In this document: positions 29,829 through 50,594 of the stretch, piece after piece
How positions within the stretch are numbered: the first letter of the stretch is position 1
Layout: every line of letters begins with the position of its first letter
Virus record (IMG/VR): IMGVR_UViG_3300032675_000001
Location: 62,001 to 126,000 of that record
DNA: 64,000 nt
Direction: 5' to 3' (one strand)
Notes under the pieces: model-generated
What the model saw: only the letters and a program-made list of their open reading frames with translations
What the model was told of the DNA's origin: nothing
Databases searched by the model: none
Position numbers and translations under genes: made by a program

Positions 29829-31052
29829 ATGAATAAATCCTTATGCCCATATCCTTTTATACATTCACATGTTAGCGCAACATATGAAAGAAAGCTTTGC
29901 TGTGTCGCAAATAGAAGTATAACGGAGTTGCACAAAACTACCGATGAGTACTGGAACTCAGATTATATCAAAAAAACTAGACTTGATATGATATCCGGTA
30001 TTCCAATACCTGACTGCAGCTTTTGTTATGATCATGAAAACAATGGCGTAAAATCACTTAGACAAACTCTTAATGAACAGTTTCCCATACAGCATTTAGT
30101 TGATCAGACCAAAGAAGATGGATCATTGGAAGTTCCGCCATCCTTTTTTGACTATCGTTCCACGACATGTAATCTGCATTGCACTACCTGTGACCACAAT
30201 CATAGTTCTAAATATGCAAAAATTTCCAATAAGCTATTGGGTAAAGAAACGATCCATAAAGTTGACATTGCCTATGAAAACAGCTTGGGAGAAGAAATCA
30301 TCACTGGACTGAGGAACAAAACGGTTAATACCATCTATTGGGCAGGCGGCGAACCAATGATAATGAAAATGCATTGGGATGTGATTGGCGAAATGGAAAA
30401 GTTATATGATGATGCCGAATATTGCTCCTACATAAAGAGCATAAAGCTATACTATAACACGAATATGACCAAGTTATACTGGAAGGGGCGTCTAATACCA
30501 GAAATACTATCCAAGTTTGATGTTACGTTATGGGCCAGTATAGATGGAGTAGAAGAAACGTTTGAGTACTGTAGAGACGGAGCAAGCTGGGAAACGGTCA
30601 AGAACAACTGGCTAATATATAAAAAATACGTTCCAAAGACTTGGGTTACATCCGTTCTATCTGCCCCAGTATTGATGGATATAGATCGCTTTCTTAGCTT
30701 TTTTGAAGCGACTGATTCCACAACCGACTTTTTCAATCACCAGTATGTGCCAAATGCGTTCTTGAACTTGCTGGATATCAGGCAGTACCCATCGGAAATA
30801 TTCAACGATATCATTGACAATGCCATAGCCAGAGTTGAGAAGTCTCCTTTAGGTGGCAAAGAATACACGCTATCTATTCTAAGAAAGTATAAAGCAGAAA
30901 ACCAACACATTGACTCAGTTGGTTATTCCGAAATAAAAAAACAAATCATTCAAAGAGACAAGTTTCTAATATCCGGATTATCATTTGAGCAATTACTTGA
31001 ACAGATTAATCCTGACGCTCACCGATGGTATAAGTCTATAACAGTTGATTAG
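29829..31052 (+). CDS. Radical SAM protein with N-terminal Twitch/SPASM-like Cys cluster
   Basis: CPYPF..H...CC, C..CY, CNLHCTTC, AGGEP and SIDG motifs. Confidence 0.9.
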   Translation: MNKSLCPYPFIHSHVSATYERKLCCVANRSITELHKTTDEYWNSDYIKKTRLDMISGIPIPDCSFCYDHENNGVKSLRQTLNEQFPIQHLVDQTKEDGSLEVPPSFFDYRSTTCNLHCTTCDHNHSSKYAKISNKLLGKETIHKVDIAYENSLGEEIITGLRNKTVNTIYWAGGEPMIMKMHWDVIGEMEKLYDDAEYCSYIKSIKLYYNTNMTKLYWKGRLIPEILSKFDVTLWASIDGVEETFEYCRDGASWETVKNNWLIYKKYVPKTWVTSVLSAPVLMDIDRFLSFFEATDSTTDFFNHQYVPNAFLNLLDIRQYPSEIFNDIIDNAIARVEKSPLGGKEYTLSILRKYKAENQHIDSVGYSEIKKQIIQRDKFLISGLSFEQLLEQINPDAHRWYKSITVD

Positions 31053-31809
31053 ATAGTTCTATTAACTTTGGATAAAAATCCTCAAAGACCTTCTTGACTT
31101 CATCAGCATTGACAATCTGATCATATGGATCAATTGATAACTGCTTTTCCCTGTAGATACCAAAAGCCTTTTCTCGCTCAGCATCACTCAGATTATCAGA
31201 TTTAGCAATCAGAGTATCATACTCCACAGTATCATAAGTGATCATTGAATCAATGATCTTTTTGTGTTGCTGTTCTATCAGATAACGAGAAACGATGAAA
31301 GACTTTAGTTCATCAATATCTACGTTTAGCATCATGGTATTACGATATGTGCTAAAGATAAAACTCTTTTTCGCAAACATGGCGCTGATTACCTTGTGCT
31401 CAAAGCTTCGTTCAACATACAAAAACTTAAACCCAAGATTAGTCAGATAATTTATTCCGTCAGCAAATCCAATTGATGCCATTCTGTCATCAAGAAACAC
31501 TCTGCATGTTAGAGCCTGAGACATATTCGCTTTGGATATGATATCAAGCCGTTCCTTGGCAACGTCTGACATTGTATTAAAGGTTGCTGCTGGCTTATTG
31601 TAAATCTTTAATTTACCATTTTCCAATGCTATAGTGTGAACTAGGCCAGCCTGAACCGTGAAGATTTCTTGCAGAGATACCACATCGTTGTATTTATTAC
31701 TAAGAGAGTAATTAACAAATGCTTCTGTTAACTGCGTTCCTGATCTTGGAACGCCCAAAATCACATAACGGTGATGTTCTAAATCCCACGGAAGATTGCT
31801 GTTAAACAT
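31036..31809 (-). CDS. Sulfotransferase-like (P-loop) protein
   Basis: ILGVPRSGT (PAPS 5'-PSB-like), R......S and YD motifs. Start moved to MFNSNL. Confidence 0.55.
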   Translation of the reverse strand: MFNSNLPWDLEHHRYVILGVPRSGTQLTEAFVNYSLSNKYNDVVSLQEIFTVQAGLVHTIALENGKLKIYNKPAATFNTMSDVAKERLDIISKANMSQALTCRVFLDDRMASIGFADGINYLTNLGFKFLYVERSFEHKVISAMFAKKSFIFSTYRNTMMLNVDIDELKSFIVSRYLIEQQHKKIIDSMITYDTVEYDTLIAKSDNLSDAEREKAFGIYREKQLSIDPYDQIVNADEVKKVFEDFYPKLIELSNQLL

Positions 31810-31813
31810 TCTA

Positions 31814-31918
31814 TTACTTATAGATGAATGGATCGCGCTTGCGAAGTTCCTTGATGCGCTTTTTGTATGCGCGATCACGTTTTATATTATTGATAATCTT
31901 TTTAATCCACTTGAACAT
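31814..31918 (-). CDS. Small basic protein (34 aa)
   Basis: Not in the track. MFKWIKKIINNIKRDRAYKKRIKELRKRDPFIYK*, with AGGA upstream. Confidence 0.65.
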   Translation of the reverse strand: MFKWIKKIINNIKRDRAYKKRIKELRKRDPFIYK

Positions 31919-32678
31919 TATTGTTATCCTTTATAAAATTGTACAGTTCTTCAGCATACAGACGATGTGGTTCCTCACTATGATGCCAGTACTGTGCCTT
32001 GTCATTGGTGTATCCCATGTGTCTGTATTTCCAGTAGAATGCTTGACTTTCATCTGTACCAACATTGTAATATCTGGTCTTGTCTATCTTGTTGACAAGG
32101 TAACTGGTAAAATGTTCATTCGGAGCAAACATATGCATGGTGTCACACATGACATAATCAATACCCAAAGACTTTAAATAATACTGTGTCATTAATACAT
32201 CAGTGGCTGACCAGTTTTCCAATATCGTTTCATTTTCTGCCATGAACTGATGATATGGAGGAATCATTTCCTTTTCATCGTCTGTATTACCATGCCATCC
32301 AAAGTTTATACGAAAGAAACTATTGCTTGAAGAATCAAACCATGGACTTGCAGAATTTCCCTCATTATAATAACATGCTCGTTTTTTTGCTGGAACTTCC
32401 ATGCGTGTGCTTTCAGTCCATCCTATTATAACAAACACGTCCATTGTATCGGGATTATATTCTTCATGAAACCAACTAAGAATGCTACGAGCAATACCAG
32501 AATTGGTGGCACCATTCAATGAAATATTAAGTGGACGATAGCCCATTTTCTTAGCTAGTACAGCACCATATGCGTTGTCACGGTTGTAGTGGCTATCTTC
32601 TGTTCCATCAATTTCTGATCCGGCAGAATGGCTACATCCGGATATTAAGGCGATCTTTTCTTTTGGCATATTGGTCAT
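31902..32678 (-). CDS. SGNH-hydrolase-like protein
   Basis: GCSHSAG, G..N..I and terminal HH...H motifs. Confidence 0.6.
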   Translation of the reverse strand: MTNMPKEKIALISGCSHSAGSEIDGTEDSHYNRDNAYGAVLAKKMGYRPLNISLNGATNSGIARSILSWFHEEYNPDTMDVFVIIGWTESTRMEVPAKKRACYYNEGNSASPWFDSSSNSFFRINFGWHGNTDDEKEMIPPYHQFMAENETILENWSATDVLMTQYYLKSLGIDYVMCDTMHMFAPNEHFTSYLVNKIDKTRYYNVGTDESQAFYWKYRHMGYTNDKAQYWHHSEEPHRLYAEELYNFIKDNNNVQVD

Positions 32679-34891
32679 GGTAAATTTGCCGTCTTTCTTC
32701 TATTAACTAGTGACTGAAACTCTGTACCATTGTCAACTTTCTTTTCAGGAATGGTGTCTCTTTTATTGGATGATACCTCTACGATATAATCTTTCCAGTT
32801 GCTCCAATCGCCAGTATTCTTATATTTTAACTCAAATGAGAAATCAATCGTTGCATTGAGAGCCGCTTCTTCGTTTAATAAATCAGCGAAATCTTGACCT
32901 GATCTTCCTTCATCCTTATCCCAATCGGGCTTGGCAAGCTTTCGTGCACGTTTAGCTGTATTAGCCTGAATGCGCGAATAATCCTGTGCATAAAATGGTC
33001 CCTTACGACCCTCAGGAGGCGGTGCACGATCATCAAATGGATTGTCAATCTGATCAAACTTAATGTCAAAGTCTGCTTCCCATAATCCTTCATCAGTAAT
33101 CTTGAACTTATAGACAGCATTATACATGCCGGGACCAAACTGTGATCCGAACTCTTTCAAGTCTATTTCAGGATTAAATCTGACTTCGGCTTCGTATCCA
33201 CCTCGTGCACGCCACAGGTTTCGGAAGAAAGGCCACATTTCATTAACAAGGGTATTAGCAAAAGGGTTGCTAGGATCAACGGGAGGAATAATATTATAAT
33301 CAAATTTCTCATAGAACATTTCTTTCTGGCAATCAGGGTTATTTAACTTAATATCATAATGATCTTTTGCCAGTGCATAACGAATAGGATAAGTTATTGG
33401 CTCACCGTCTTTACAGTGTGAAATAAAGTCTGCCCATATGTGAATGCACTTGACACGAGTCATGACATGTGTGCCACCCTTTGCTAAATCGTTGGATATC
33501 CAATGTCCCTGATATTTGTGCCATGATACATTGAACTTGTGGGGATTTTGTCCTACGATAGTTTCTGGTCCTACAGCAAATCCTACACCAAGACCCATAT
33601 TACCAATGGCATCACGCATACGCCATTGTAGAGTCATCGTGTCAGAATAATCTTGAAAGTCCTCAGTGCTGAATCCTACAATCCAGTTAGTATCGCACCC
33701 AATACCTACCTTCTTACAGTCAATGAAGTTTTGCTCAATCTCAGCAATGGTAACTCCCTTGTGCATATCATCAAGAACCTTTTGGCTTCCTGATTCAGTG
33801 CCAAAATTAAATCGTAGACATCCACCGTCCGCCAAGTCCTGTAGATATTCCAAATCCATTCTCTCATCATGGCGAGCATACCCAGTGAACTTTACCTTTA
33901 AGTCTTTAGCTTTAAGTGCTAGCGCAAATGCACGAAGTTCTTTTATGTTACCATTAATAAGAGAATCAATAAACCAAATAACATCTGTGCCCTTATTATA
34001 ATAGAGCCATTCTATTTCAGTGATTAAATCTACAGCCTGACGTTGACGATATTTCCAGAAATGTGTCTCTTCACAAAAAGAACACTTGGCAGTACATCCT
34101 CGTGATATTTCAGAGTTAATACCATTGGGAAGTTCATAATGACTAAAATCAATACTTTCATAGTCGGGCATTGGAAGGTTATTAATATTGATACGTTGAT
34201 TTTCTGGTTGTGATAGGATTTGTGTTTCTGTAGGTCTCCATCCTTCTTCAATCTCATCCAACATTACCAATAGATTTTGCTCGCCTTCACCAATAACAAC
34301 ATAGTCATAATATGGCTGAATCTCAAACCATGATTTATGAACGTTTGGTCCACCCACAGCAATAAGAATGTCTGGCTTACGGCGCTTTAGTTCTTTGCAC
34401 ATCCACTTTGTAGGCTCTTCGGAAATATAGTAGACGCTGAATCCAACAACATCTGGATTCATTGCAATAATATCATCTACGGCCTGTGATAGAATAGGTT
34501 CCAGAACAGGATGGATGTCGTTCATATATGTTTCACCCAGCCAGTGCCATGATGCACTCGGGTCCCAAAGCCTAAATGGAAGTTTATTATTTGGATGCCA
34601 ATCATTACGATAAGCATTGTATGCCTTGACATTTAAATCCATAATATGAGTTTCATATCCAGCCGCCTTGGCAATGCCAGATAGCTTAGCTAGAGAGAAT
34701 GGAGGCATATATGGCGACCATTCAGGACATAGAACAAGAACCATTTTGGTTTGTCTCGTTTTATAATCCACATATACCGGCGTCAAGTTTTTTTCATTGA
34801 CGACCGCAGGCTTGGCATATGGCGCAATAGCGTCCATCATAGCCTGATGGCGCAAATCGGATATATCCTGTGTAGGTCTTTCTCTTGTCAA
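32675..34891 (-). CDS. Cobalamin-binding (class B) radical SAM enzyme
   Basis: B12-binding domain (DVVGFS...VGGP), SRGCTAKCSFC and G.ESGSQKVL motifs. Confidence 0.9.
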   Translation of the reverse strand: MTRERPTQDISDLRHQAMMDAIAPYAKPAVVNEKNLTPVYVDYKTRQTKMVLVLCPEWSPYMPPFSLAKLSGIAKAAGYETHIMDLNVKAYNAYRNDWHPNNKLPFRLWDPSASWHWLGETYMNDIHPVLEPILSQAVDDIIAMNPDVVGFSVYYISEEPTKWMCKELKRRKPDILIAVGGPNVHKSWFEIQPYYDYVVIGEGEQNLLVMLDEIEEGWRPTETQILSQPENQRININNLPMPDYESIDFSHYELPNGINSEISRGCTAKCSFCEETHFWKYRQRQAVDLITEIEWLYYNKGTDVIWFIDSLINGNIKELRAFALALKAKDLKVKFTGYARHDERMDLEYLQDLADGGCLRFNFGTESGSQKVLDDMHKGVTIAEIEQNFIDCKKVGIGCDTNWIVGFSTEDFQDYSDTMTLQWRMRDAIGNMGLGVGFAVGPETIVGQNPHKFNVSWHKYQGHWISNDLAKGGTHVMTRVKCIHIWADFISHCKDGEPITYPIRYALAKDHYDIKLNNPDCQKEMFYEKFDYNIIPPVDPSNPFANTLVNEMWPFFRNLWRARGGYEAEVRFNPEIDLKEFGSQFGPGMYNAVYKFKITDEGLWEADFDIKFDQIDNPFDDRAPPPEGRKGPFYAQDYSRIQANTAKRARKLAKPDWDKDEGRSGQDFADLLNEEAALNATIDFSFELKYKNTGDWSNWKDYIVEVSSNKRDTIPEKKVDNGTEFQSLVNRRKTANLP

Positions 34892-34901
34892 CTTAGGTTC
34901 C

Positions 34902-35987
34902 TTATTCAGACATATTTAGAGCATCGCTGACAGTGAAATATTTAATAAGGTCTTTTGTTACGGTAAAATCAGTCTGATTGTTCAGTATATCAGCATTGTG
35001 TTCTACTATGGGTTTAATATTGTGTGTCCACTGAATCATCTCATCGTCAGAAAGGCTGCACAATCGTTTTATTTCATTTACTATCGCATCCATTCTTTCT
35101 CTAGGGTCAGTGATCAGATCATATGATTCATCAATATAAGGAGCAAAGGTTTTGTATCCTCGGGAGCGCAATGTAGCGAGAAAGCCTACAGTTCCAACCA
35201 CAATGAATGGATGTTTCATTGCCAGCGGCTTGAATATCTTCTCAGAGAAGAAACAACCCGGAGATATTATTTGACCATCTGGATAATACCTATACATGGT
35301 TTCAGTTACTACCGAGAAATAAGAATTGCTGAAATACGACCAATCATCTGGTGTGATGTCCACTGGATTCTCATCATAGCTATTAATATTCAGTTTTAAT
35401 GGTAGCCTGTTTATATTCTGCACACAGTATGGAAAGTTGTCCTTGTATTCAATAATATTGTCAATAAAAGATGGCTCGCTTCCTTGAAATGAATAGTAAG
35501 CCTGATCAACAAGTCCTGCCTTAAACATTTCCTCTAGTAGTTCTATTCTATGTTGACGATGAACTTTATTAAAGCAAAGAAACTTTTTATCCCTCAGACC
35601 CGGTACATATTCATGAGGCGTGTGGATTCCATAGGATGACTTAAACATCGCTTCAAAATAAGACATTGATGCTATTTTGAGTAATGATTCTTCGTGGTTC
35701 ATTTCCAAGAACGTATTATAGGCTTGCTCACCCTTAAGATCACCAGTCAGGAAAAAGAACTGAGCATTAGGAACACTGTCTTTTACGTACTTAACTATTG
35801 AATGAACTCTAGAGATAACATCGTACCAAAATGATTCAGACAGGCAATCAAACATGATGTTTGTTTTGCCTTCTGAATAAGCTAATCGTATATCGTTAAC
35901 TACGGTAAAGAAATCTCTGTGAATAATACTGTGATCACTATGCAGCCCAGCATATATGGGATGCATAGTGTCTTTAAAAGGAATCAA
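34902..35987 (-). CDS. Putative GT-B glycosyltransferase (TET/SEK family), paralog 1
   Basis: FLCFN..HR.HR; SVVTET...SEKIFKP...HPF...GYKTF..DESYD, reminiscent of the GT10 TEK motif. Confidence 0.6.
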   Translation of the reverse strand: MIPFKDTMHPIYAGLHSDHSIIHRDFFTVVNDIRLAYSEGKTNIMFDCLSESFWYDVISRVHSIVKYVKDSVPNAQFFFLTGDLKGEQAYNTFLEMNHEESLLKIASMSYFEAMFKSSYGIHTPHEYVPGLRDKKFLCFNKVHRQHRIELLEEMFKAGLVDQAYYSFQGSEPSFIDNIIEYKDNFPYCVQNINRLPLKLNINSYDENPVDITPDDWSYFSNSYFSVVTETMYRYYPDGQIISPGCFFSEKIFKPLAMKHPFIVVGTVGFLATLRSRGYKTFAPYIDESYDLITDPRERMDAIVNEIKRLCSLSDDEMIQWTHNIKPIVEHNADILNNQTDFTVTKDLIKYFTVSDALNMSE

Positions 35988-36013
35988 ATCATTCCAGTTT
36001 TCAAGTATTTGTG

Positions 36014-37237
36014 TTAGAGTCCACTGTCCTGCTTCAGGGTGTGGCTCAAATCTTTTTTTTGGCGTGTGTTGCCATAGTGGACAATTGGTCCACTATGTTG
36101 ATATGTATTAATACGTCTCCAAGGATCAACTACCGTGCAGCGATCGGGAAACTTTAGATCAGCAACATAATGTTCCCAATATCCGATTAAATAAACATCA
36201 GTCGTATCAGCAGCAAGATCGGTATCACCAGTATGAATGTCATAGTAGTTTACATTTCCACCATGCTGTTCAACATAATATCCGACCAACATTGAAGAAG
36301 AACCATTCGTATAGTGCACTCCGGGCTTATATGCCTTACCGACGATGGTTACATTATTGCCATACTCAAGACACTTCTTGGCCATGTTTTCAGCCTGCAC
36401 TTCACGTGCTCGCATAATAGCGTCAAAAAGGTCATATCCAAGACCAAGATTTTCTGCCATATAACGCAGAGCAATATTGTCACGTGGATGACATGCCCCA
36501 CCATCACCCATTCCAGCCATCATATATGCTGGACCTGTGATGCGATAGTTTGATCTTGCAAGAGCGCCTGTTACCACATCAACGTCAATATTGCCATTCT
36601 TTTCGGCAACGTCCTGAATCATGTTAACGATACCAACCTTTGCTGAAATAAAAGTGTTGTAGAAAATCTTAATGGATTCTGCTTCATCCCATGTACCAAC
36701 TTCATAACGTGGATCATTCTGCATGAATACCTTGTAGAAATCAATCAACTCAGCAGCATCACCAGTAATAGAGCCATCCTCTGTACCAATAATGACCATT
36801 TCTGGATTAACCATATCCCACTTGATTGTTCCCATTGCAATAAGATATGGATTGTAAATAAACCGTGCATTAGTGATGCAAGGACGTAATTGACTACGAA
36901 CTGTTCCCGGAAGCACTGTGCTAATGAGCACTACCAACTGGTCTTGGCTTACCCATTTATTAACTTCTTTGAGAATATCAGTTACGATAGTGTAATCAAA
37001 GTCCTTATTAGGAAGATGACTTGTTGGAGTTTCTCCACCATAGATAGGATCATGTGGAGTAGGAGCAGCAATAAAGATAATATCTCTATCTGCTACTGCA
37101 TCCTGAATGGTATTGCACATTGGGAATAATGGAGTTCTTGGTTCAACATCATATCCAACTACATCATAGTGTTCTGACATAACTTCGGCACAGTCTTGCC
37201 CGAGTTTGCCGCATCCGATCATTGCTACTTTTTTCAT
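36014..37237 (-). CDS. UDP-glucose/GDP-mannose 6-dehydrogenase family protein
   Basis: GCGKLG, STVLPGT, K...N, GGACHPRD and G.AYK motifs. TATAAATA at 37243..37250. Confidence 0.92.
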   Translation of the reverse strand: MKKVAMIGCGKLGQDCAEVMSEHYDVVGYDVEPRTPLFPMCNTIQDAVADRDIIFIAAPTPHDPIYGGETPTSHLPNKDFDYTIVTDILKEVNKWVSQDQLVVLISTVLPGTVRSQLRPCITNARFIYNPYLIAMGTIKWDMVNPEMVIIGTEDGSITGDAAELIDFYKVFMQNDPRYEVGTWDEAESIKIFYNTFISAKVGIVNMIQDVAEKNGNIDVDVVTGALARSNYRITGPAYMMAGMGDGGACHPRDNIALRYMAENLGLGYDLFDAIMRAREVQAENMAKKCLEYGNNVTIVGKAYKPGVHYTNGSSSMLVGYYVEQHGGNVNYYDIHTGDTDLAADTTDVYLIGYWEHYVADLKFPDRCTVVDPWRRINTYQHSGPIVHYGNTRQKKDLSHTLKQDSGL

Positions 37238-37325
37238 GAAAATATTTATAGTCCCTGTTGGTGTGTAATAAATTTTATCTGATATTCCATTATACCATGG
37301 TATAATGCGCCGCGTTATTTAATAC

Positions 37326-41810: not shown

Positions 41811-41814
41811 GCCA

Positions 41815-42792: not shown

Positions 42793-43094
42793 AATGTCTC
42801 TTCTATATATTTCTTTAGTTCTTTTAAAGTGGTATCGTAATCTTCTACTACACCGATCATGCTGTTTTTGACTTTAGGTTCAATGACTACAGTATAACAA
42901 CAGTTGTTATTGGTGGTCCATCTGAATACTCGGTTATAAATCCATCGTTCACTGTAAGTTGGTTCACCGAAAAAGCCTTTATATCCCGAAATGAAACCAT
43001 ATGACTTGTAATCATTAGCATTAGGATGAAAATCAAGCTGCTCCAGCTTTTTGAGATTATATAACTTCTTCAAGAAATATAACATGTCAGACAT
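42789..43094 (-). CDS. Hypothetical protein
   Basis: Coupled ORF; start uncertain. Confidence 0.6.
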   Translation of the reverse strand: MSDMLYFLKKLYNLKKLEQLDFHPNANDYKSYGFISGYKGFFGEPTYSERWIYNRVFRWTTNNNCCYTVVIEPKVKNSMIGVVEDYDTTLKELKKYIEETL

Positions 43095-44368: not shown

Positions 44369-44612
44369 TTGCTTCTTCTGTTTCCGAAACTCTTTTATAA
44401 GTTACAATATTATTGAGAATATTCTTAATCTTGATTTCAATGCTGTTGTCTTCATCATCAAGAGTTACTTGTGCAGCAGCATCACTGCCAAATGATCTGA
44501 TAATATCACTCATTACCGCATCACATGTTTCCTGAGTTAGAGGCTCAAACATATACTTGTCAAGAATAGCGTTAATCTCTTTATCCATTGCTTCATTAAT
44601 ATCAAATGTCAT
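44361..44612 (-). CDS. Hypothetical protein
   Basis: Coupled ORF. Confidence 0.65.
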   Translation of the reverse strand: MTFDINEAMDKEINAILDKYMFEPLTQETCDAVMSDIIRSFGSDAAAQVTLDDEDNSIEIKIKNILNNIVTYKRVSETEEANG

Positions 44613-44613
44613 A

Positions 44614-45153: not shown

Positions 45154-45154
45154 A

Positions 45155-46387
45155 TCATTTCTCCAAATCTCTCAGTTTACTTAGTTCAGGGAAGACAGAC
45201 CAAAAGTTTTCGTCTCTGATTCTATCTATAGAACGAGTGTGCTGTAGGAACGTTTCCTTTACTTTAGCCCAATCATCACTGTCTGATGCAAAGTTGACAG
45301 CATCGGTAATAAGTCTTGACAATGATGTTCCATCACCTTCGTTGGCTGTTGCCCATGCCAATGCTTTCTTGGCGGCTTCATCCTTAAGTTCACGAGGTAA
45401 TGATTTGGCACAGTAATAGTTAGGATGAACTGCAAGATAGAGTGAGTGATACCAATCTTCTCTACGAACTATTCCCTTGTCCTTTAGGTATTGATAAAAC
45501 TCACCAATGGTGCTATAGTTAAAAATGCTAAACACCGTGTTCATTTGAAATACTACCTGCTCAAGGTCACGAAAAATGAGGAGGTTTTCCTCTACTTTAC
45601 CCCAATCAGTTCCCTTGCGCAACCATTCTGCACGTTCGCCATAATGATCTATTGAGCAAGATAGTTCCACTCTCTTAAAGTGTTTCCACAGTTCAAGGAC
45701 ATCATGCTTTTTATACTTGATATTGCTTGCGTTTGTGTTGTATCTTAATGTGATATCGGTGCGACCTTTGCGAATCATTTCCTCAAGCATCGTATAATGC
45801 TCGTCGGTGATCAGTGGTTCGCCGCCTGCAAAATATGCAAGGTCAATATTTTCCACTTGATCAAGTGCTTCTTGCAGTAGATTACCCTTGGGATCAGCAT
45901 GAATAACAATAGGATGATTTGGGTCATAGTTCTTCTGCATCTCTGCACCCCACTGTGAGCTAAACTCTGAGCCACAGGTTCTGCATTTAAAGTTACATAT
46001 GTTGGAGAAACGAATGTCAAAATAGTGCATCTTAAAATCAGGCACGGTGCCATCATCCAGAGTGGTCGGAACGATTTCGTCAAACCGTGATGCAAACTGC
46101 TCTTTACTGTAGTTTCTGAATGAGTGTGGTCCAGCTTCCTCATGCTTATAGCAAAAGTCGCAAATCTTAGATTTGCGACCATTAAGCATATCAAGGCGAA
46201 GCGCCTTCATCTTCTCATTATTGAATGCTTCTTTGAGGGAAGTCTCTTTGGTATTACCAAATGGTTCAGTATAGTTGTTTGAACAGCAAGGATAGATATC
46301 ACCTTTAGGCGTCACGTTTAAGTGAAGCCATGGAAACATGCAGAACTCTTTGCTTTCGTTTAACAGGTAATCTTTATCTAAATCCAT
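45155..46387 (-). CDS. Radical SAM protein with N-terminal Twitch-like cluster
   Basis: FCMFPWLH...PCC, CNFKCRTC and AGGEP motifs. Paralog of 43094..44368. Confidence 0.92.
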   Translation of the reverse strand: MDLDKDYLLNESKEFCMFPWLHLNVTPKGDIYPCCSNNYTEPFGNTKETSLKEAFNNEKMKALRLDMLNGRKSKICDFCYKHEEAGPHSFRNYSKEQFASRFDEIVPTTLDDGTVPDFKMHYFDIRFSNICNFKCRTCGSEFSSQWGAEMQKNYDPNHPIVIHADPKGNLLQEALDQVENIDLAYFAGGEPLITDEHYTMLEEMIRKGRTDITLRYNTNASNIKYKKHDVLELWKHFKRVELSCSIDHYGERAEWLRKGTDWGKVEENLLIFRDLEQVVFQMNTVFSIFNYSTIGEFYQYLKDKGIVRREDWYHSLYLAVHPNYYCAKSLPRELKDEAAKKALAWATANEGDGTSLSRLITDAVNFASDSDDWAKVKETFLQHTRSIDRIRDENFWSVFPELSKLRDLEK

Positions 46388-46446
46388 TAACTTTCCCTTA
46401 TAAGACTATATTATATAGCACGATAAAAGGGAGTGCCAATGTTTTA

Positions 46447-46644
46447 TTACGATTCCCGAATCACATCAAATATGTCACCCCATTCAATGACAATCTCGTA
46501 CTGTGCGTGTTGATATTTCCGCACTACCCTACAATATGATGGTTTAAACGGGTAGACAATCTTTCCGCTTACAGTACGATGGAACCACTTTGGCTTCATG
46601 GGCATCCAATCCTGAATGACTACCGGATCAAAAAAGTTTTTCAT
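46447..46644 (-). CDS. Hypothetical protein
   Basis: Short ORF loosely similar to 47634..47855. Confidence 0.55.
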   Translation of the reverse strand: MKNFFDPVVIQDWMPMKPKWFHRTVSGKIVYPFKPSYCRVVRKYQHAQYEIVIEWGDIFDVIRES

Positions 46645-46690
46645 AAAATTTCGCGCTAATCTACTTAGGTGTGTAAGTCATAAAAATCAG

Positions 46691-46734
46691 CATCTTAGTC
46701 CCCCATCATAAATACGTGATAGGAGACTAAGATG
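46691..46734. promoter_or_regulatory. Long hairpin with late-promoter motif at the loop and RBS/ATG in the 3' arm
   Basis: CATCTTAGTCCCCCATCA-TAAATACG-TGATAGGAGACTAAGATG. Confidence 0.7.
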
Positions 46735-46890
46735 ACACTTGATGAATTTAATGAAGAATGGCGCGCGCTGACAGAGGATGAAATTGAAGCGCTTGGTGGG
46801 CTACGGAAGCGGATATTCATTCTGGACCCCGCAATATACCTTCAACAAACTCTTCGTATTCTTGCAGATCATGGAATTGATATACATTGA
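46732..46890 (+). CDS. Small antisense-oriented protein (52 aa)
   Basis: Not in the track. ATAAATA at 46708..46714 and AGGAG RBS precede MTLDEFNEEWRALTEDEIEALGGLRKRIFILDPAIYLQQTLRILADHGIDIH*. Confidence 0.6.
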   Translation: MTLDEFNEEWRALTEDEIEALGGLRKRIFILDPAIYLQQTLRILADHGIDIH

Positions 46891-46983
46891 CAATGGATTG
46901 CTTTTCCATTTGATGTCTTCGTTTAACGCCCTACCACCAAAAACAAACATTAAATCATCAGAAATACTAGTCGGAATGTTCAT
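46801..46983 (-). CDS. Hypothetical protein
   Basis: ATGA-coupled to the upstream LRWS gene; overlaps the + strand ORF. Confidence 0.4.
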   Translation of the reverse strand: MNIPTSISDDLMFVFGGRALNEDIKWKSNPLSMYINSMICKNTKSLLKVYCGVQNEYPLP

Positions 46984-47180
46984 GACCACCTCAACGTAAA
47001 CAGAGTGGCATCTTTTGGATCACCGAACCAAAACTCATAGATTATGTCTATTGACAGGCTGACATCAGACATATCTGTTTCTCTGTACCGACTATAACTG
47101 ACACAATGTTTTTTAGCCCAAAAAATCAACTCTAGAGTGGTAGCATCCGGATCAAACAGTTCTACTTTTGTTAACTCCAT
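46980..47180 (-). CDS. F-x-L-R-W-S family protein
   Basis: Ends FGDPKDATLFTLRWS. Confidence 0.75.
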   Translation of the reverse strand: MELTKVELFDPDATTLELIFWAKKHCVSYSRYRETDMSDVSLSIDIIYEFWFGDPKDATLFTLRWS

Positions 47181-47641
47181 CTTAGACTAAACCACGTATA
47201 GTCAGACTCTTCCTTGAAGGCGAAAAACATTACATCGCCGCCGCCGATTTCATTAAACTCAAAGTTATCTTGGTTATCCCACAGCCCACGAAGCCAATCG
47301 TTTCTCCACTTACCTTGACAATTCTGTTCGCACCAGTCTGCCATTTGGTCTATGACATCAAAATTAAAGGCAGTATTTGTAATACGCGGAACGTTTAATG
47401 CATGATTAGCAGTGCTAGGACGCAGTTGTGTAAAGCTATAGTAGATATAGTGTTTATCAGGTACTGACCATATGAACTTATAACCGTGATAGTATGTGTG
47501 TGCCCAACGAGCCATTGGGCCAATATCAGAGTCATATCTGCGCTCATATTCACGCCAAGTTTTACAGCCATGAGTTTCTAGAAAGCGTTTTTCACGCCAT
47601 CCTGTCCATCGCGTTTTTAATTCTTTTATAGGATTATTCAT
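47171..47641 (-). CDS. F-x-L-R-W-S family protein
   Basis: WCEQN; ends FKEESDYTWFSLRWS. Confidence 0.8.
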   Translation of the reverse strand: MNNPIKELKTRWTGWREKRFLETHGCKTWREYERRYDSDIGPMARWAHTYYHGYKFIWSVPDKHYIYYSFTQLRPSTANHALNVPRITNTAFNFDVIDQMADWCEQNCQGKWRNDWLRGLWDNQDNFEFNEIGGGDVMFFAFKEESDYTWFSLRWS

Positions 47642-47855
47642 CTCGTAAAACTTTCAGCATGTATTCTTTTTGAGAGAGCCATATATTGCCAATATACCCG
47701 TAATCAGTGCTACGTATCCCTTTGTAGGCTGTTCTTAGGAACAACAACTTGTTACTACGATTGCATCTGGTAAAGAGCCATAAAACTCTGCGTTTCACCC
47801 AAGTCCATCTCACTCTCATAGAACGGTCAATATCTTTATCCCAGTAAAAAGCCAT
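47634..47855 (-). CDS. Hypothetical protein in the LRWS array
   Basis: Ends WLSQKEYMLKVLRDE. Confidence 0.65.
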   Translation of the reverse strand: MAFYWDKDIDRSMRVRWTWVKRRVLWLFTRCNRSNKLLFLRTAYKGIRSTDYGYIGNIWLSQKEYMLKVLRDE

Positions 47856-47858
47856 TAG

Positions 47859-48047
47859 TTATCCCCACCTCAACTTAAACCATATTGCATCTTCTTCGCT
47901 CTGAAACCGTATGCCTTCTCTACCGTCTATACTACTTCCAACAGTCCATCGTTGTGGTTCCGGCAACGGTGGGTTTGGCATCTTTTCATCTAACCAGTCG
48001 CCAGCTTCTACTAACACTTTTAAGGGGACTTCAATATCAATACTCAC
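47859..48047 (-). CDS. F-x-L-R-W-S family protein
   Basis: GTGA-coupled start; ends FQSEEDAIWFKLRWG. Confidence 0.75.
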   Translation of the reverse strand: MSIDIEVPLKVLVEAGDWLDEKMPNPPLPEPQRWTVGSSIDGREGIRFQSEEDAIWFKLRWG

Positions 48048-48403
48048 GACCACCTCAACATAAACCAAGAAACATCCTTCTCATTCTTGAGAAAGACATA
48101 GTATACTCCCGTATACCAATCGCCCTGTTTTAAGTTCTGTTCGCACCATTCACGTATTACGTAATAGTCCTGTGGATCAATCTCAGAATACCATCCTCCG
48201 TCTCGTTCTTCTACCCACTGATTCTTGTCAAGAATGATACCAAGATCATCGGTCCAGCGCGACCAATGCCACGCTGGATTGCCACGTTCGTAGCGAAACT
48301 TTGGCTTGATCCTTTCTGGTGAAACTATATGCCATGCAGCATTCAGTTTTCTAGTTTTAGCAGTCACTGTTGTCTTTATAATATCAAACTTAATATCAGT
48401 CAT
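48044..48403 (-). CDS. F-x-L-R-W-S family protein
   Basis: WCEQN; ends NEKDVSWFMLRWS. Confidence 0.8.
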   Translation of the reverse strand: MTDIKFDIIKTTVTAKTRKLNAAWHIVSPERIKPKFRYERGNPAWHWSRWTDDLGIILDKNQWVEERDGGWYSEIDPQDYYVIREWCEQNLKQGDWYTGVYYVFLKNEKDVSWFMLRWS

Positions 48404-48618
48404 GTTTCCCTCAAGATAAACCAAACATAATCTTCTTCACGATCAAAAACAATGTGTACTTGACCTTCCCGAATCGTGATCTTTTGATCATACGTATCGT
48501 TCCAATGACATACCCATGCACGGTAAAAAACCCCCTCCGTATTAATAATCTTGTCGAACCTATTACGGAACCATTCAGGTTGCTGATTATGATCCTTCGG
48601 GACTTTGTAGTAATACAT
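48400..48618 (-). CDS. F-x-L-R-W-S family protein
   Basis: TAATG-coupled; ends FDREEDYVWFILRET. Confidence 0.75.
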   Translation of the reverse strand: MYYYKVPKDHNQQPEWFRNRFDKIINTEGVFYRAWVCHWNDTYDQKITIREGQVHIVFDREEDYVWFILRET

Positions 48619-48935
48619 TATGACCACCTCAATGTCAAATAGACCCAAGCCTTTTCAGCATCAGCATATCGTTTGAATATCATAGAACGATGCCCATAGT
48701 CTTCTCCACCAAACGATTTCATGATTGCCAGTGCATCATTTAGTACCTCAGTAAAATCAATGCTAAATTTAACAGCAATAACCCACTTGTTCTTGTGGCC
48801 ACCTGTCTTGCGTTGCACCCTCTTACGATAGAGCATAAAATGATTGTTTTGTAGCTCTACTGGTCTATAAATGTCAAGCGTCACATTCTTCAACAGACGG
48901 GAAAGCATTTCTTGCCCTGAAATAGTTTTAGTCAT
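48618..48935 (-). CDS. F-x-L-R-W-S family protein
   Basis: ATGA-coupled; ends DAEKAWVYLTLRWS. Confidence 0.75.
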   Translation of the reverse strand: MTKTISGQEMLSRLLKNVTLDIYRPVELQNNHFMLYRKRVQRKTGGHKNKWVIAVKFSIDFTEVLNDALAIMKSFGGEDYGHRSMIFKRYADAEKAWVYLTLRWS

Positions 48936-49213
48936 GACCACCTCAACAGAAACAAAATCATGTCGCGTTCATCGGTGAACTCGTAATAGTCATCCCAGTT
49001 GTTGTATGTCGCATTGTATTTTGATGCCATATCTGCGTTCCACTTAACCCAATGCATATATACACTACGACTGTCAGTTGGAGCAATGGCTTGATGCTCT
49101 TTGGAGATGTTATAAAACCATTGCTTCCGCACCGTGCGGCTGGCATCATCATGGACATATAGACGCAGATTATCCCTTGTTACATGGGATTCATTAGGTT
49201 CACTTCTTGACAT
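48932..49213 (-). CDS. F-x-L-R-W-S family protein
   Basis: Ends FTDERDMILFLLRWS. Confidence 0.75.
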   Translation of the reverse strand: MSRSEPNESHVTRDNLRLYVHDDASRTVRKQWFYNISKEHQAIAPTDSRSVYMHWVKWNADMASKYNATYNNWDDYYEFTDERDMILFLLRWS

Positions 49214-50577
49214 AAGCGGTAGAAATCCAACATCTCAGGGTACACGGTTAACAAGTCCGTCTCACGACGATCATCAATCTCATTGAACCAGTTGTAGAAA
49301 TCTCTACGTCCTTCAATGAGCTTCTGATCGCTATACACCGTTTCCGCCATATAGTCAACAACTCTTTTGAACTTTTCATACTCGATAGTAGAGAAAGCAT
49401 CGGCGCGGTCATCATCAAGGTTGTCTTCCATAAACTTCAATGACTCGCACATATATGGCATGAACTCATCCTTGGGAAGAATGTTCATGTCATACTGAAT
49501 CGGATCACGAAGATATGGAGTGTCAAAACGAATGATGTGCTGCTTGCGCTCTTCATCCCATCCATACTGCTTACGCCATTCAAGAAACTTCTCTAGAAGA
49601 CTCTTGAAGCTTGTCACACTGAAAATATTAAATGTGATCATGAATGTGATAGGAGACTGTGCCTTGCTTACATAGGTGTGGAAGTTCTTTTCCCACACAT
49701 CTAGGTCTAGTCCAGTGCGAATATACTCCGCACGTTCTCCCCATGTATCCATTGAAGTGAACAGCTTGAATGCTCTGATTTTACCTTCATCCTGTAGCTT
49801 TCGGACTTTGGTTGCAAGGCGATCAATCAGAATATTCTTCGTGCCTAGGTTTGAGTTAATGTTTAGTTCCAACCATGGCATTGGGTCTTCATCAATCTTG
49901 TCTAGCAGTTGCCATGTAGACTTGTGAAGAGTTGGTTCTCCGCCTGTGACACGCATGATGTTTAATGTTTGTCTCAGTTCAGGCCACCATTCCCAGAATG
50001 CATCAACATATGGGTTTTCTTCTTCACGTTGATAAAGTTTCATCCAGTCAATATCGCAGCGATGGTTCTTGACACTTGTTACCGGACCAAAATCTTCAAT
50101 CTCTTTGAAGTAGCGAGTTGAGTATTTTGGATGACAGTATCCGCATTTGAAATTGCATTCGTTGCCAAAGTTTATTTCCAAGTATTCCGGATTGATATTC
50201 TGATTCCAAGCACCCTTTGCTGTCTGTTCGTAACGTTCTTCTGTGAAGATAGAACTGTTGCGAATGTGTCGGTCAGAGATATAATCCTTACCCATTGCTT
50301 CCACGTTCCAGCAGTATTGACACCCTTTTGGCTTTTCTCCATTGAGCATCTGCTGACGCTCTAACTTCTTTTCAGTTGTATTGTGGAGAGCCGATGGATT
50401 ATCTTTTAGTTCACTCAATGGAATCTTGTGAGGAGCCGGGTGATAGCATGAATGCGTTTCCCCTGTCTGCAAGTAGATAGTCGTATGCATCCATTTTGCT
50501 AAACAGAAAGTCTTAGTAGAGTCAACGTCTATATAATCACGTATGCGTTTAATTCTGTCAACTTCGGATTCTTGCAT
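49180..50577 (-). CDS. Radical SAM protein with N-terminal Twitch-like cluster
   Basis: FCLAKW...SCYHP, C.YCW, CNFKCGYC and TGGEP motifs. Start moved to MQESEV. Confidence 0.92.
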   Translation of the reverse strand: MQESEVDRIKRIRDYIDVDSTKTFCLAKWMHTTIYLQTGETHSCYHPAPHKIPLSELKDNPSALHNTTEKKLERQQMLNGEKPKGCQYCWNVEAMGKDYISDRHIRNSSIFTEERYEQTAKGAWNQNINPEYLEINFGNECNFKCGYCHPKYSTRYFKEIEDFGPVTSVKNHRCDIDWMKLYQREEENPYVDAFWEWWPELRQTLNIMRVTGGEPTLHKSTWQLLDKIDEDPMPWLELNINSNLGTKNILIDRLATKVRKLQDEGKIRAFKLFTSMDTWGERAEYIRTGLDLDVWEKNFHTYVSKAQSPITFMITFNIFSVTSFKSLLEKFLEWRKQYGWDEERKQHIIRFDTPYLRDPIQYDMNILPKDEFMPYMCESLKFMEDNLDDDRADAFSTIEYEKFKRVVDYMAETVYSDQKLIEGRRDFYNWFNEIDDRRETDLLTVYPEMLDFYRLCQEVNLMNPM

Positions 50578-50594
50578 GGGCTTCTTTTCTGATG

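What the first reader, a model, noticed from the sequence alone, without database searches (positions are those of the whole stretch)
29829..50577. Six radical SAM enzymes, four with the auxiliary Cys cluster at the N-terminus and one B12-dependent
Seen: CxxxCxxC in 29829, 32675, 41815, 43094, 45155 and 49180. Four begin with a C..(P/K)(W/F)..H...C(C) segment ahead of the SAM domain. Knowledge: SPASM/Twitch domains are normally C-terminal; the Twitch enzyme BtrN oxidises a sugar-like substrate; class B enzymes methylate unactivated C or P. Inference: a permuted radical SAM family doing sugar or peptide tailoring, implying dependence on host Fe-S and cobalamin supply.
Basis: partly seen in the sequence, partly recalled or inferred. 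Interest (0 to 1): 0.6.

Follow-up and report, generated by a model that had tools for sequence, protein, structure and literature searches.

The report
Phage sugar-tailoring island with permuted radical SAMs
A 360-kb freshwater jumbo phage carries a conserved block of six radical SAM enzymes, four from a catalogued but uncharacterised family with its extra iron-sulfur domain at the front, set among glycosyltransferases and sugar-modifying enzymes, so it most likely builds an unusual, heavily tailored sugar.

Summary
All six ORFs are radical SAM (rSAM) proteins with one CxxxCxxC each.

- **N-terminal twitch enzymes.** Four ORFs (29829, 43094, 45155, 49180) pass NCBIfam NF033640 "N_Twi_rSAM" at 248-378 bits (cut-off 170). 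Their four invariant N-terminal Cys align with the four auxiliary-cluster Cys of BtrN's C-terminal twitch domain (E 2e-5). The "permuted" architecture is therefore real, but already curated, with more than 4,000 relatives. I found no paper on its function.
- **B12 enzyme.** ORF 32675 is a B12-binding (class B) rSAM that fits no named subfamily.
- **Context.** The window lies in a 360,683-bp lake-water phage. The rSAM genes sit among:
  - four paralogous GT-B-fold glycosyltransferase-like proteins;
  - a GT-A-like protein;
  - an NDP-sugar dehydrogenase;
  - an SDR epimerase/dehydratase;
  - a NovN/TobZ-like O-carbamoyltransferase.
- **Conservation.** The rSAM core is syntenic in 47 related phage contigs, and parts of it recur in Bdellovibrionia.
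- **Peptide tailoring.** The neighbouring small ORFs are not conserved, so peptide tailoring is unsupported.

Most likely this is a cytoplasmic sugar or glycan tailoring island. The acceptor is unknown and the chemistry is inferred, not shown.

The parts
28298..29788 (-). O-carbamoyltransferase (NodU/CmcH family), 496 aa
   Evidence: Pfam Carbam_trans_C 164 bits and Carbam_trans_N 129 bits. Nearest solved relatives are NovN (E 1e-47), GdmN and TobZ. 62-64% identical copies lie in the syntenic L057/L064 contigs, and homologues lie beside N_Twi genes in L053, L066, L094 and L110.
29829..31052 (+). N-terminal-twitch radical SAM, paralogue D, 407 aa (most divergent, opposite strand)
   Evidence: NF033640 248.5 bits against cut-off 170. 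Twitch Cys at 6, 24/25, 63 and 66; CxxxCxxC at 114.
31902..32678 (-). DUF6071-like protein, 258 aa, function unknown
   Evidence: Weak Pfam DUF6071 hit (18.7 bits). Its homologue in L057 reaches the cut-off (27.4 bits) and is related to it at phmmer E 1e-8.
32675..34891 (-). B12-binding (class B) radical SAM, 738 aa, putative methyltransferase
   Evidence: Pfam B12-binding 45.7 bits and Radical_SAM 53.8 bits. Best NCBIfam hits (RiPP C-methyltransferase, ApyD, ladderane-type, PhpK, BchE) are all far below their cut-offs. TokK is the best solved match for the B12 domain. It belongs to the variable tail of the module.
34902..35987 (-). GT-B-fold glycosyltransferase-like paralogue a, 361 aa
   Evidence: Paralogous to 37326, 38444 and 40485. 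The family fold is taken from the model of 40485.
36014..37237 (-). NDP-sugar dehydrogenase (UDP-Glc/GDP-Man dehydrogenase family), 407 aa
   Evidence: Pfam UDPG_MGDP_dh central and N-terminal domains. TIGR03026 141 bits, below its cut-off of 189.8.
37326..38456 (-). GT-B-fold glycosyltransferase-like paralogue b, 376 aa
   Evidence: The Atlas search shows virus-only clusters, some fused to an SDR epimerase.
38444..39550 (-). GT-B-fold glycosyltransferase-like paralogue c, 368 aa (most divergent)
   Evidence: Weak but consistent similarity to the other three paralogues.
39508..40488 (-). NAD-dependent sugar epimerase/dehydratase (extended SDR), 326 aa
   Evidence: Pfam Epimerase 155 bits. Nearest NCBIfam models are GDP-fucose synthase and GalE, both below cut-off. 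Conserved in 25 related loci at about 72% identity.
40485..41858 (-). GT-B-fold glycosyltransferase-like paralogue d, 457 aa as the longest ORF (true start probably about 15 codons in)
   Evidence: AF2 model with pLDDT 82. Foldseek hits OtsA and glycogen synthase at E 1e-6. VIA Z 12.4 to GT10 fucosyltransferase, followed by GtfC, EXT1/2 and T4 BGT; all top 50 matches are glycosyltransferases or pseudo-glycosyltransferases. 703 relatives found, all unnamed and mostly on phage-size contigs.
41815..42792 (-). Radical SAM, 325 aa, with a conserved C-terminal Cys set (probably an ordinary C-terminal auxiliary cluster)
   Evidence: Pfam Radical_SAM 34.8 bits. No NCBIfam family above cut-off. C263, C282, C305, C310 and C312 are invariant in 41/41 sequences. 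580 close relatives at 70-85% identity. Adjacent to the paralogue-B orthologue in Bdellovibrionia loci L053/L058.
43094..44368 (-). N-terminal-twitch radical SAM, paralogue B, 424 aa
   Evidence: NF033640 362 bits. Pfam SPASM at residues 18-82. Orthologues in 45 related loci at about 74% identity.
45155..46387 (-). N-terminal-twitch radical SAM, paralogue A, 410 aa
   Evidence: NF033640 377.9 bits. AF2 model with pLDDT 92. The rSAM barrel, residues about 119-371, matches anSME, BlsE, CteB and DesII at Z 12-13. The BtrN twitch aligns to residues 7-75.
46388..49179 (-). Non-conserved spacer with small ORFs (47171-47641, 48044-48424, 48618-48941, 48932-49213)
   Evidence: These ORFs hit 0-1 related loci. 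No remnant of the extra tandem paralogue that relatives carry at this position.
49180..50661 (-). N-terminal-twitch radical SAM, paralogue C (493 aa longest ORF; likely start 50577, 465 aa)
   Evidence: NF033640 314.6 bits. Orthologues of 464-488 aa in all 47 loci at about 73% identity.
50660..51175 (+). HNH endonuclease ORF inserted in the conserved module
   Evidence: Pfam HNH_3 38.8 bits. Present in only 1 related locus. Paralogous to 52123-52791.
51179..52126 (-). Conserved 315-aa protein, GT-A-like (tentative)
   Evidence: The Atlas nearest cluster is auto-named 'Glycosyltransferase 2-like' with score 0.99. An Asp-x-Asp motif (I65 D66 G67 D68) is invariant. Found in 44 related loci at about 70% identity. 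No Pfam or PDB sequence hit.
52123..52791 (-). Second HNH endonuclease ORF inserted in the module
   Evidence: Pfam HNH_3 38 bits. Not conserved in relatives.
52800..55196 (-). Three conserved unknown genes that head the module in all relatives (108, 250 and 270 aa)
   Evidence: Found in 30 related loci at 54-74% identity and always directly upstream of the 51179 orthologue. The only family hit is phrog_1903, of unknown function.
23167..28104 (-). Giant 1645-aa ORF flanking the island; its C-terminal region is a degenerate copy of the 51179 domain
   Evidence: 32% identity over 176 aa to 51179, with the Asp-x-Asp position replaced. No Pfam or PHROG hit.

Best explanation
The region is a phage-encoded, cytoplasmic sugar/glycan biosynthesis and tailoring island.

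Shown: the domain content, the conserved Cys ligand sets, the synteny across relatives and the co-occurrence with the same enzymes in bacteria.

Inferred: host nucleotide sugars are remodelled by the NDP-sugar dehydrogenase and the SDR, and transferred by the GT-A-like and four GT-B-like enzymes. The phage has no nucleotidyltransferase of its own.

Inferred by analogy with BtrN and anSME: each N-terminal-twitch enzyme uses its CxxxCxxC [4Fe-4S] cluster to cleave SAM. The resulting 5'-deoxyadenosyl radical abstracts a sugar C-H hydrogen. The fully Cys-ligated N-terminal twitch cluster takes or relays the electron, giving oxidation to a keto-sugar, epimerisation, dehydration or C-C rearrangement.

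The four paralogues are only 21-30% identical, so they would act at different positions or on different sugars. The B12 enzyme would add a C-methyl group. The carbamoyltransferase would O-carbamoylate a hydroxyl.

The acceptor is unknown. A virion protein is my first guess, because every island protein looks soluble and the island abuts tail-fibre-like genes.
For: Family and ligands are established.

Sugar context inside one co-directional gene block: NDP-sugar dehydrogenase, SDR and carbamoyltransferase. Four GT-B-fold paralogues have all top-50 structural matches to glycosyltransferases. Viral relatives of these paralogues are fused to an SDR or to a UDP-Glc dehydrogenase. The GT-A-like 51179 has an invariant DxD motif.

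Synteny: the order u270-u250-u108-51179-NTwiC-NTwiA-NTwiB-rSAM325 is fixed in relatives, followed by a variable tail of GT-B paralogues, SDR, dehydrogenase and B12 rSAMs.

Bacterial co-occurrence: one locus (L129) holds four N_Twi genes with GT2, GT4, GT9-methyltransferase and YdjC. An Elusimicrobiota locus holds N_Twi with GT2, GT4 and a B12 rSAM. In L053/L058 the NTwiB and rSAM325 orthologues are adjacent and a carbamoyltransferase is nearby.

No NTP_transferase gene, no Bac_transf priming transferase and no hydrophobic segment in any island protein.

A tail-fibre-type Peptidase_G2 chaperone domain lies at 56512-57729.
Against: No member of NF033640 has a known substrate as far as I could find.

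Most bacterial N_Twi genes are single-copy with heterogeneous neighbours. Among 136 neighbouring ORFs the commonest families were other rSAMs (15), SPASM (7) and YaaA (5), with no dominant sugar signal.

Some bacterial homologues carry TPR or Sel1 repeats, which hints at protein partners.

The GT assignments rest on fold and an automatic cluster name, not on sequence families.

The rSAM barrel matches peptide-modifying enzymes (anSME, CteB, SuiB) as well as it matches sugar-modifying ones (BlsE, DesII).

There is no expression data: no RNA run holds the region.
Confidence: 0.5

Rival explanations
1. Protein or peptide modification. The N_Twi enzymes and the 325-aa rSAM act directly on a phage or host protein or peptide (cross-links, epimerisation, Cys/Ser oxidation as in anSME), and the glycosyltransferases act separately or on the same protein.
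For: The best structural matches of the barrel include anSME, CteB, SuiB, SkfB and the peptide epimerase EpeE. Bacterial homologues are fused to TPR or Sel1 repeats. Several small ORFs sit between the rSAM genes.
Against: The small ORFs (42789, 44361, 44614, 47171-49213) occur in 0-7 of 47 related loci, whereas the enzymes occur in 41-47. No PqqD/RRE-type domain was reported by Pfam or NCBIfam. All peptide-maturase equivalogs score far below their cut-offs.
Confidence: 0.15
2. DNA hypermodification. The island makes and tailors a sugar that is attached to phage DNA bases to evade restriction, as T4 glucosylates hydroxymethylcytosine.
For: T4 beta-glucosyltransferase is among the GT-B matches (Z 11.7, but rmsd 7.0). 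The window also holds thymidylate synthase, DHFR and an 851-aa DNA methyltransferase-like ORF. From my own knowledge, rSAM enzymes take part in some thymidine hypermodification pathways.
Against: The genome has only one ThyA-family gene, and it scores as a canonical thymidylate synthase (355 bits), so there is no hydroxymethylase paralogue. No Tet_JBP match was found, although the control genomes also gave none. No C5-methyltransferase scores over cut-off. The island is syntenic with tail-fibre-like genes rather than replication genes, and parts of it recur in bacterial chromosomes.
Confidence: 0.1
3. A diffusible small molecule. The island makes an aminoglycoside-like or nucleoside-like glycoside during infection, not a decoration of a macromolecule.
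For: The enzyme set parallels aminoglycoside and aminocoumarin tailoring. It includes a BtrN-type twitch domain, a NovN/TobZ-like O-carbamoyltransferase, a class B rSAM whose B12 domain best matches TokK, and a DegT aminotransferase with an SDR at 3233-5234. All proteins look soluble and there is no lipid-carrier priming enzyme.
Against: Five glycosyltransferase-like genes suggest an oligosaccharide on an acceptor. I did not look for a scaffold-forming enzyme (cyclitol synthase, NRPS/PKS) and none appeared in the window scans. No exporter or self-resistance gene was seen. No phage precedent is known to me.
Confidence: 0.1

Closest known systems
NCBIfam NF033640, N_Twi_rSAM ('twitch domain-containing radical SAM protein')
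   Same: Four of the six ORFs score 248-378 bits against a 170-bit cut-off over the full model. They share the twitch-then-rSAM order and the same 4 + 3 Cys pattern.
   Different: Nothing architectural differs. The family has no assigned function. Here it occurs as four deeply diverged paralogues (21-30% identity) in a phage, embedded among glycosyltransferases.
BtrN (butirosin 2-deoxy-scyllo-inosamine dehydrogenase), the founding twitch enzyme
   Same: The twitch domain is homologous: a profile alignment at E 2.3e-5 matches all four auxiliary-cluster Cys. BtrN's substrate is sugar-like (my own knowledge).
   Different: In BtrN the twitch follows the rSAM barrel (residues 167-238 of about 250). 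Here it precedes the barrel (residues 7-79 of about 410). The barrels themselves are not close: BtrN's barrel gave no significant sequence match. There is also an extra helical C-terminal region of about 100 aa.
anSME / SPASM-domain rSAM enzymes (AslB, CteB, SuiB, PqqE)
   Same: Best structural matches of the barrel (Z 12-13). The Pfam SPASM model hits the N-terminal segment.
   Different: SPASM enzymes bind two auxiliary clusters through 7-8 Cys at the C-terminus and mostly act on peptides. Here only four Cys are invariant (a fifth, C34, is nearly so) and the domain is N-terminal.
Class B cobalamin-dependent rSAM methyltransferases (TokK, GenK, Fom3, PhpK)
   Same: ORF 32675 has the B12-binding domain followed by the rSAM domain with CxxxCxxC. 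TokK is the best solved match.
   Different: It is below the cut-off of every named NCBIfam subfamily (best 93 bits against 282). It also has about 130 extra N-terminal and 300 extra C-terminal residues of unknown function.
NodU/CmcH O-carbamoyltransferases (NovN, GdmN, TobZ)
   Same: Both Pfam domains score over cut-off, with E 1e-47 to NovN.
   Different: It is shorter (496 aa against 576-702 aa); the first roughly 100 positions of the N-terminal Pfam model are not matched. Its acceptor is unknown.

Membership tests
NF033640 N_Twi_rSAM | Whole-protein score above the curated 170-bit cut-off, over the full model | tested here: met
   248.5, 362, 377.9 and 314.6 bits for ORFs 29829, 43094, 45155 and 49180. 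The whole-genome scan found the same four over the cut-off plus only a sub-threshold match (30 bits) over ORF 41815.
NF033640 N_Twi_rSAM | Twitch domain placed N-terminal to the CxxxCxxC rSAM domain | tested here: met
   Pfam SPASM at residues 16-79 and Radical_SAM at 126-300 in ORF 45155. The invariant Cys order is C16, C35, C76, C79, then C131/135/138.
Twitch domain (BtrN type) | Homology to BtrN's auxiliary-cluster domain, with its four Cys ligands conserved | tested here: met
   hmmsearch of the A3 profile against PDB: positions 7-75 align to BtrN 167-238 (E 2.3e-5 and 3.2e-5), and the four Cys are aligned.
Twitch domain (BtrN type) | Actually binds one fully ligated [4Fe-4S] cluster | not testable with these tools
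   Needs reconstitution with Fe/S quantification and EPR or Mossbauer spectroscopy.
Full SPASM domain | Seven or eight conserved Cys for two auxiliary clusters | tested here: not met
   Only four invariant Cys, plus one nearly invariant (C34), precede the rSAM motif.
Class B (cobalamin-dependent) radical SAM | B12-binding domain N-terminal to an rSAM domain with CxxxCxxC | tested here: met
   ORF 32675: PF02310 45.7 bits (cut-off 32.1) at residues 136-205, PF04055 53.8 bits at residues 261-419, and Cys at 266/270/273.
Named class B subfamilies (TIGR03975, ApyD, PhpK, BchE, HpnJ and others) | Score above the subfamily cut-off | tested here: not met
   The best is 93.3 bits against 281.85. All 22 hits are below their cut-offs.
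RiPP-maturing rSAM | Conserved adjacent precursor peptide gene and a peptide-recognition (RRE/PqqD-like) domain | tested here: not met
   The small ORFs are not conserved. No such domain was reported. Absence of an RRE was judged only from Pfam and NCBIfam scans.
Viperin / MoaA (considered for ORF 41815) | Score above the equivalog cut-off | tested here: not met
   viperin_w_prok 30.7 bits against 180, and MoaA 29.3 bits against 284; only the N-terminal roughly 90 residues align.
GT-B glycosyltransferases (for ORFs 34902, 37326, 38444, 40485) | Two Rossmann-like domains with the GT-B topology | tested here: met
   AF2 model with pLDDT 82. VIA Z 10-12.4 to 50 entries that are all glycosyltransferases or pseudo-glycosyltransferases. 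Foldseek E 1e-6.
GT-B glycosyltransferases | Membership of a sequence-defined GT family, or nucleotide-sugar binding | tested here: inconclusive
   No Pfam, NCBIfam, PHROG or PDB sequence hit. Only a weak Atlas lead to GT10 (score 0.78).
NodU/CmcH carbamoyltransferase | Carbam_trans_N and Carbam_trans_C both over their cut-offs | tested here: met
   129 and 164 bits; NovN at E 1.2e-47.

The most novel reading that the evidence does not exclude
The alternating GT / N-terminal-twitch rSAM genes form an assembly line. Each added sugar is radically re-tailored (oxidised, epimerised, C-methylated, carbamoylated) after transfer to a phage structural protein. This would give a widespread clade of freshwater jumbo phages a virion glycan made by chemistry not known from any virus, and would assign a first function to an rSAM family of more than 4,000 members.
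Probability: 0.2. Interest if true: 0.85.

Novelty: new member of a known kind. Interest (0 to 1): 0.5.

Why it matters
NF033640 is a large family (more than 4,000 relatives in the word search) with no substrate I could find. This phage clade offers it in an unusually informative setting. Three to five diverged paralogues sit in fixed order beside a C-terminal-twitch-like rSAM, glycosyltransferase-like proteins, a carbamoyltransferase and B12 enzymes. That gives enzymologists a defined set of candidate substrates to try.

It would also be a striking investment for a virus. Six oxygen-sensitive Fe-S enzymes, one needing cobalamin, are conserved at 70-85% identity across hundreds of lake and marine jumbo-phage contigs. 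This implies strong selection on whatever sugar product they make, with virion decoration, host-range or defence evasion as the likely roles. It also implies dependence on host Fe-S assembly, reductant and B12.

Tried and rejected
- **Near-identical phage DNA.** No match in the INPHARED collection. By protein there were only distant hits, about 22% identity, in Vibrio and Ralstonia jumbo phages.
- **Literature.** "N-terminal twitch", "N-terminal SPASM", DUF6071 and jumbo phage + radical SAM + glycosyltransferase all returned nothing relevant. PDB 8vpo, the best sequence match of the barrel, is a RiPP cyclopropyl synthase and matches the core only.
- **Introns or inteins.** Over-long tblastn spans in some orthologues (L008, L033, L038, L046) looked like introns or inteins. 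They are tandem extra paralogues at 44-51% identity. No remnant of such a copy lies in the window's 46388-49179 spacer.
- **Bacterial context as a guide to function.** The immediate neighbours of 61 bacterial N_Twi loci are heterogeneous. Multi-rSAM bacterial loci add only two DegT and two GT2 among 58 ORFs.
- **"Haliscomenobacter", "Rickettsiales" and "Flavobacteriaceae" MAG contigs (L057/L064, L103/L104, L048).** These are syntenic with the phage, down to the unknown head genes. I treat them as probable phage DNA in bins, not as bacterial context.
- **51179 and the GT-B family against PDB by sequence.** Nothing found.
- **Cobalamin or other riboswitches.** None found; only the tmRNA passed Rfam thresholds.

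Full report
**Where the window lies.** The window is bases 62,001-126,000 of a 360,683-bp IMG/VR virus record with direct terminal repeats, rated complete. It is a jumbo phage. The exact stretch recurs in 16 lake-water metagenome runs, which may include the source sample, and at 93% of its sampled words in a run of a separate freshwater study. No RNA run holds it. GC content is about 40% throughout.

**The observation.** Six ORFs each carry exactly one CxxxCxxC, and the six-frame translation of the whole window holds only 12 such motifs. All six hit Pfam Radical_SAM.

- *N-terminal twitch enzymes.* Four ORFs pass NCBIfam NF033640 "twitch domain-containing radical SAM protein" (N_Twi_rSAM) over the full model, against a 170-bit cut-off:

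| ORF | Strand | Score (bits) |
|---|---|---|
| 29829-31052 | + | 248.5 |
| 43094-44368 | - | 362 |
| 45155-46387 | - | 377.9 |
| 49180-50661 | - | 314.6 |

  A whole-genome scan found the same four over the cut-off, plus only a sub-threshold 30-bit match over ORF 41815.
- *Domain order.* The Pfam SPASM model hits residues 16-79 and 18-82, ahead of the rSAM domain.
- *Conserved residues.* I aligned 30 sequences: the four paralogues, nine phage orthologues and 17 bacterial homologues at about 30-37% identity. C16, C35, C76, C79, C131, C135 and C138 are invariant. P19, W20, H22 and C34 are nearly so.
- *Is it a twitch domain?* A profile of that alignment searched against all PDB sequences matches BtrN at residues 167-238 with profile positions 7-75 (E 2.3e-5). 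The printed alignment puts the family's four Cys opposite the four Cys of that segment. From my own knowledge, these are BtrN's auxiliary-cluster ligands C169, C188, C232 and C235. The N-terminal segment is therefore a genuine twitch domain moved to the other end of the barrel.
- *The barrel.* An AF2 model of ORF 45155 (pLDDT 92) shows residues about 119-371 as an rSAM barrel. It matches anSME, BlsE, CteB and DesII at Z 12-13.
- *B12 enzyme.* ORF 32675-34891 has a B12-binding domain followed by an rSAM domain. It is below the cut-off of every named class B subfamily.
It has five C-terminal Cys (263, 282, 305, 310, 312) conserved in 41 of 41 sequences. The first pair has the same 18-residue spacing as a twitch. 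It probably carries a conventional C-terminal auxiliary cluster.

**The surroundings.** From 55196 down to 28298 nearly every gene is on the minus strand.

- *Recognisable sugar enzymes.* These are an NDP-sugar dehydrogenase (36014), an extended-SDR epimerase/dehydratase (39508) and a NodU/CmcH O-carbamoyltransferase (28298). The last is closest to NovN, GdmN and TobZ.
- *GT-B-like paralogues.* Four ORFs with no family hit (34902, 37326, 38444, 40485) are paralogues of one another.
  - A model of 40485 (pLDDT 82) has the GT-B fold. All 50 top VIA matches are glycosyltransferases or pseudo-glycosyltransferases.
  - The best matches are GT10 fucosyltransferase (Z 12.4), GtfC, exostosins and T4 beta-glucosyltransferase.
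  - Viral relatives occur fused to an SDR or to a UDP-glucose dehydrogenase.
- *GT-A-like protein.* ORF 51179 has an invariant Asp-x-Asp motif, and its nearest Atlas cluster is auto-named "Glycosyltransferase 2-like". This assignment is tentative.
- *Location in the cell.* No island protein has a hydrophobic segment. The genome has no NTP_transferase and no Bac_transf priming transferase. The pathway therefore looks cytoplasmic, starts from host nucleotide sugars, and is not a Wzx/Wzy-type surface-polymer pathway.
- *Neighbouring structural genes.* Just beyond the island lie tail-fibre-like genes, including one with a Peptidase_G2 intramolecular-chaperone domain.

**Conservation.**

- *Related phage contigs.* 47 IMG/VR contigs carry orthologues of ORF 45155 at 65-85% identity (46% in L046). 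In them the order u270-u250-u108-51179-NTwiC-(extra NTwiA)-NTwiA-NTwiB-rSAM325 is fixed. The downstream tail of GT-B paralogues, SDR, dehydrogenase, DUF6071 and different B12 rSAMs varies.
- *Size of the clade.* The 325-aa rSAM and the GT-B family have 580 and 703 relatives in the word search, many on contigs of 320-363 kb.
- *Small ORFs.* The small ORFs between the rSAM genes, and the two HNH endonuclease ORFs, are not conserved. This removes them as candidate precursor peptides.
- *Bacterial relatives.* The family has more than 4,000 relatives in the word search. The bacterial ones fetched here come mostly from Bdellovibrionota, Flavobacteriales and other Bacteroidota, and Polyangiaceae.
- *Single-copy bacterial genes.* Most bacterial copies are single, with unrelated neighbours.
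- *Multi-copy bacterial loci.* Several loci echo the phage set:
  - four N_Twi genes with GT2, GT4, GT9-methyltransferase and YdjC;
  - N_Twi with a B12 rSAM, GT2 and GT4;
  - in Bdellovibrionia, an adjacent NTwiB + rSAM325 pair with a carbamoyltransferase close by.
- *Probable mis-binned phage DNA.* Contigs binned as Haliscomenobacter, Rickettsiales and Flavobacteriaceae are syntenic with the phage and are probably phage DNA.

**Most likely mechanism.** The domain content, ligand sets, synteny and co-occurrence are shown. The chemistry is inferred.

1. Host NDP-sugars are oxidised or epimerised by the dehydrogenase and the SDR, then transferred by the GT-like proteins.
2. Each N_Twi enzyme cleaves SAM at the CxxxCxxC cluster.
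3. The 5'-deoxyadenosyl radical abstracts a hydrogen from a sugar carbon.
4. The twitch cluster accepts or relays the electron, as proposed for BtrN and anSME.
5. The class B enzyme C-methylates and the carbamoyltransferase caps a hydroxyl.

I put 0.5 on "sugar or glycan tailoring". I put much less on any particular acceptor, with a virion protein as my first guess.

**Rivals.**

- *Protein or peptide modification (0.15).* For it: the structural matches to peptide-modifying enzymes and the TPR/Sel1 fusions in bacterial homologues. Against it: no conserved precursor gene and no recognition domain.
- *DNA hypermodification (0.1).* For it: T4 BGT is among the fold matches. Against it: there is only one, canonical ThyA-family gene, no Tet_JBP match and no C5-methyltransferase over cut-off. 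The Tet_JBP control rang nowhere, so that negative is weak.
- *A diffusible aminoglycoside-like product (0.1).* For it: the enzyme set parallels aminoglycoside tailoring. There is no direct evidence.

**Host dependence.** No Flavodoxin_1, Fer2, NifU_N or CobS_N match exists in the complete genome.

**Comparison and novelty.** The permuted architecture is not new: it is NF033640. I did not find the following described:
- any function for the family;
- its occurrence as a conserved multi-paralogue block in a widespread jumbo-phage clade;
- its linkage to a C-terminal-Cys rSAM, a carbamoyltransferase and B12 rSAMs.

I rate the finding a new member of a known kind, with interest 0.5.

Noticed in passing
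window 16963-17307 (-): The phage encodes a permuted (two-piece) tmRNA. Rfam tmRNA_permuted scores 85.5 bits and alpha_tmRNA 65.8 bits; ARAGORN reads the tag peptide ANDNSTMDIALAA. The alphaproteobacterial type is a hint about the host.
   Followed up: partly
window 50660-51175 (+) and 52123-52791 (-): Two paralogous HNH endonuclease ORFs (39% identity) are inserted between genes that are contiguous in most relatives. They look like free-standing homing endonucleases.
   Followed up: partly
window 23167-28104 (-): A 1645-aa ORF has no Pfam or PHROG hit and is rich in Pro, Asp, Val, Thr and Tyr over its first 1000 residues. Its C-terminal part is a copy of the 51179 domain with the Asp-x-Asp motif replaced. 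It may be an inactive sugar-binding module on a structural protein.
   Followed up: partly
window 3233-5234 (-): A DegT/DnrJ/EryC1 sugar aminotransferase and a second SDR epimerase/dehydratase lie 24 kb from the island. They form a possible amino-deoxy-sugar branch.
   Followed up: no
window 5682-8835 (-): A GIY-YIG/I-TevI-like homing endonuclease sits next to a canonical thymidylate synthase (355 bits) and DHFR.
   Followed up: no
window 10400-13400: A stretch of higher GC (0.475 against about 0.40) has long overlapping ORFs on both strands (10603-12003 +/10672-12018 -, 12101-13312 +/12197-13309 -). The coding strand is unresolved.
   Followed up: no
genome (G000:C1) 233334-233846, 237522-237836, 283211-283504; outside the window: A seventh radical SAM domain lies in a 533-aa open frame, with weak GT2-like matches 4 kb and 50 kb away. 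There may be a second sugar or rSAM locus in the same phage.
   Followed up: no
L008 7543-11221, L001 8718-11230, L014 8731-11230 and others: Relatives carry one or two extra tandem copies of the 45155-type enzyme at 44-51% identity. Paralogue number therefore varies within the clade.
   Followed up: yes
L057, L064 (Haliscomenobacter MAG); L103, L104 (Rickettsiales MAG); L048 (Flavobacteriaceae MAG): Contigs filed under bacterial MAGs are syntenic with this phage island, including its unknown head genes and a 62-64% identical carbamoyltransferase in L057/L064. They are probably jumbo-phage DNA binned with bacteria, or prophage-like regions.
   Followed up: partly
window 56512-57729 (-): A tail-fibre-like protein carries a Peptidase_G2 intramolecular-chaperone autocleavage domain and a virion-structural PHROG hit, directly beyond the island.
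   Followed up: no
window 19712-22267 (-): An 851-aa ORF has DNA-methyltransferase PHROG hits at its N-terminal 115 residues and again at residues 608-651. The type was not determined.
   Followed up: no
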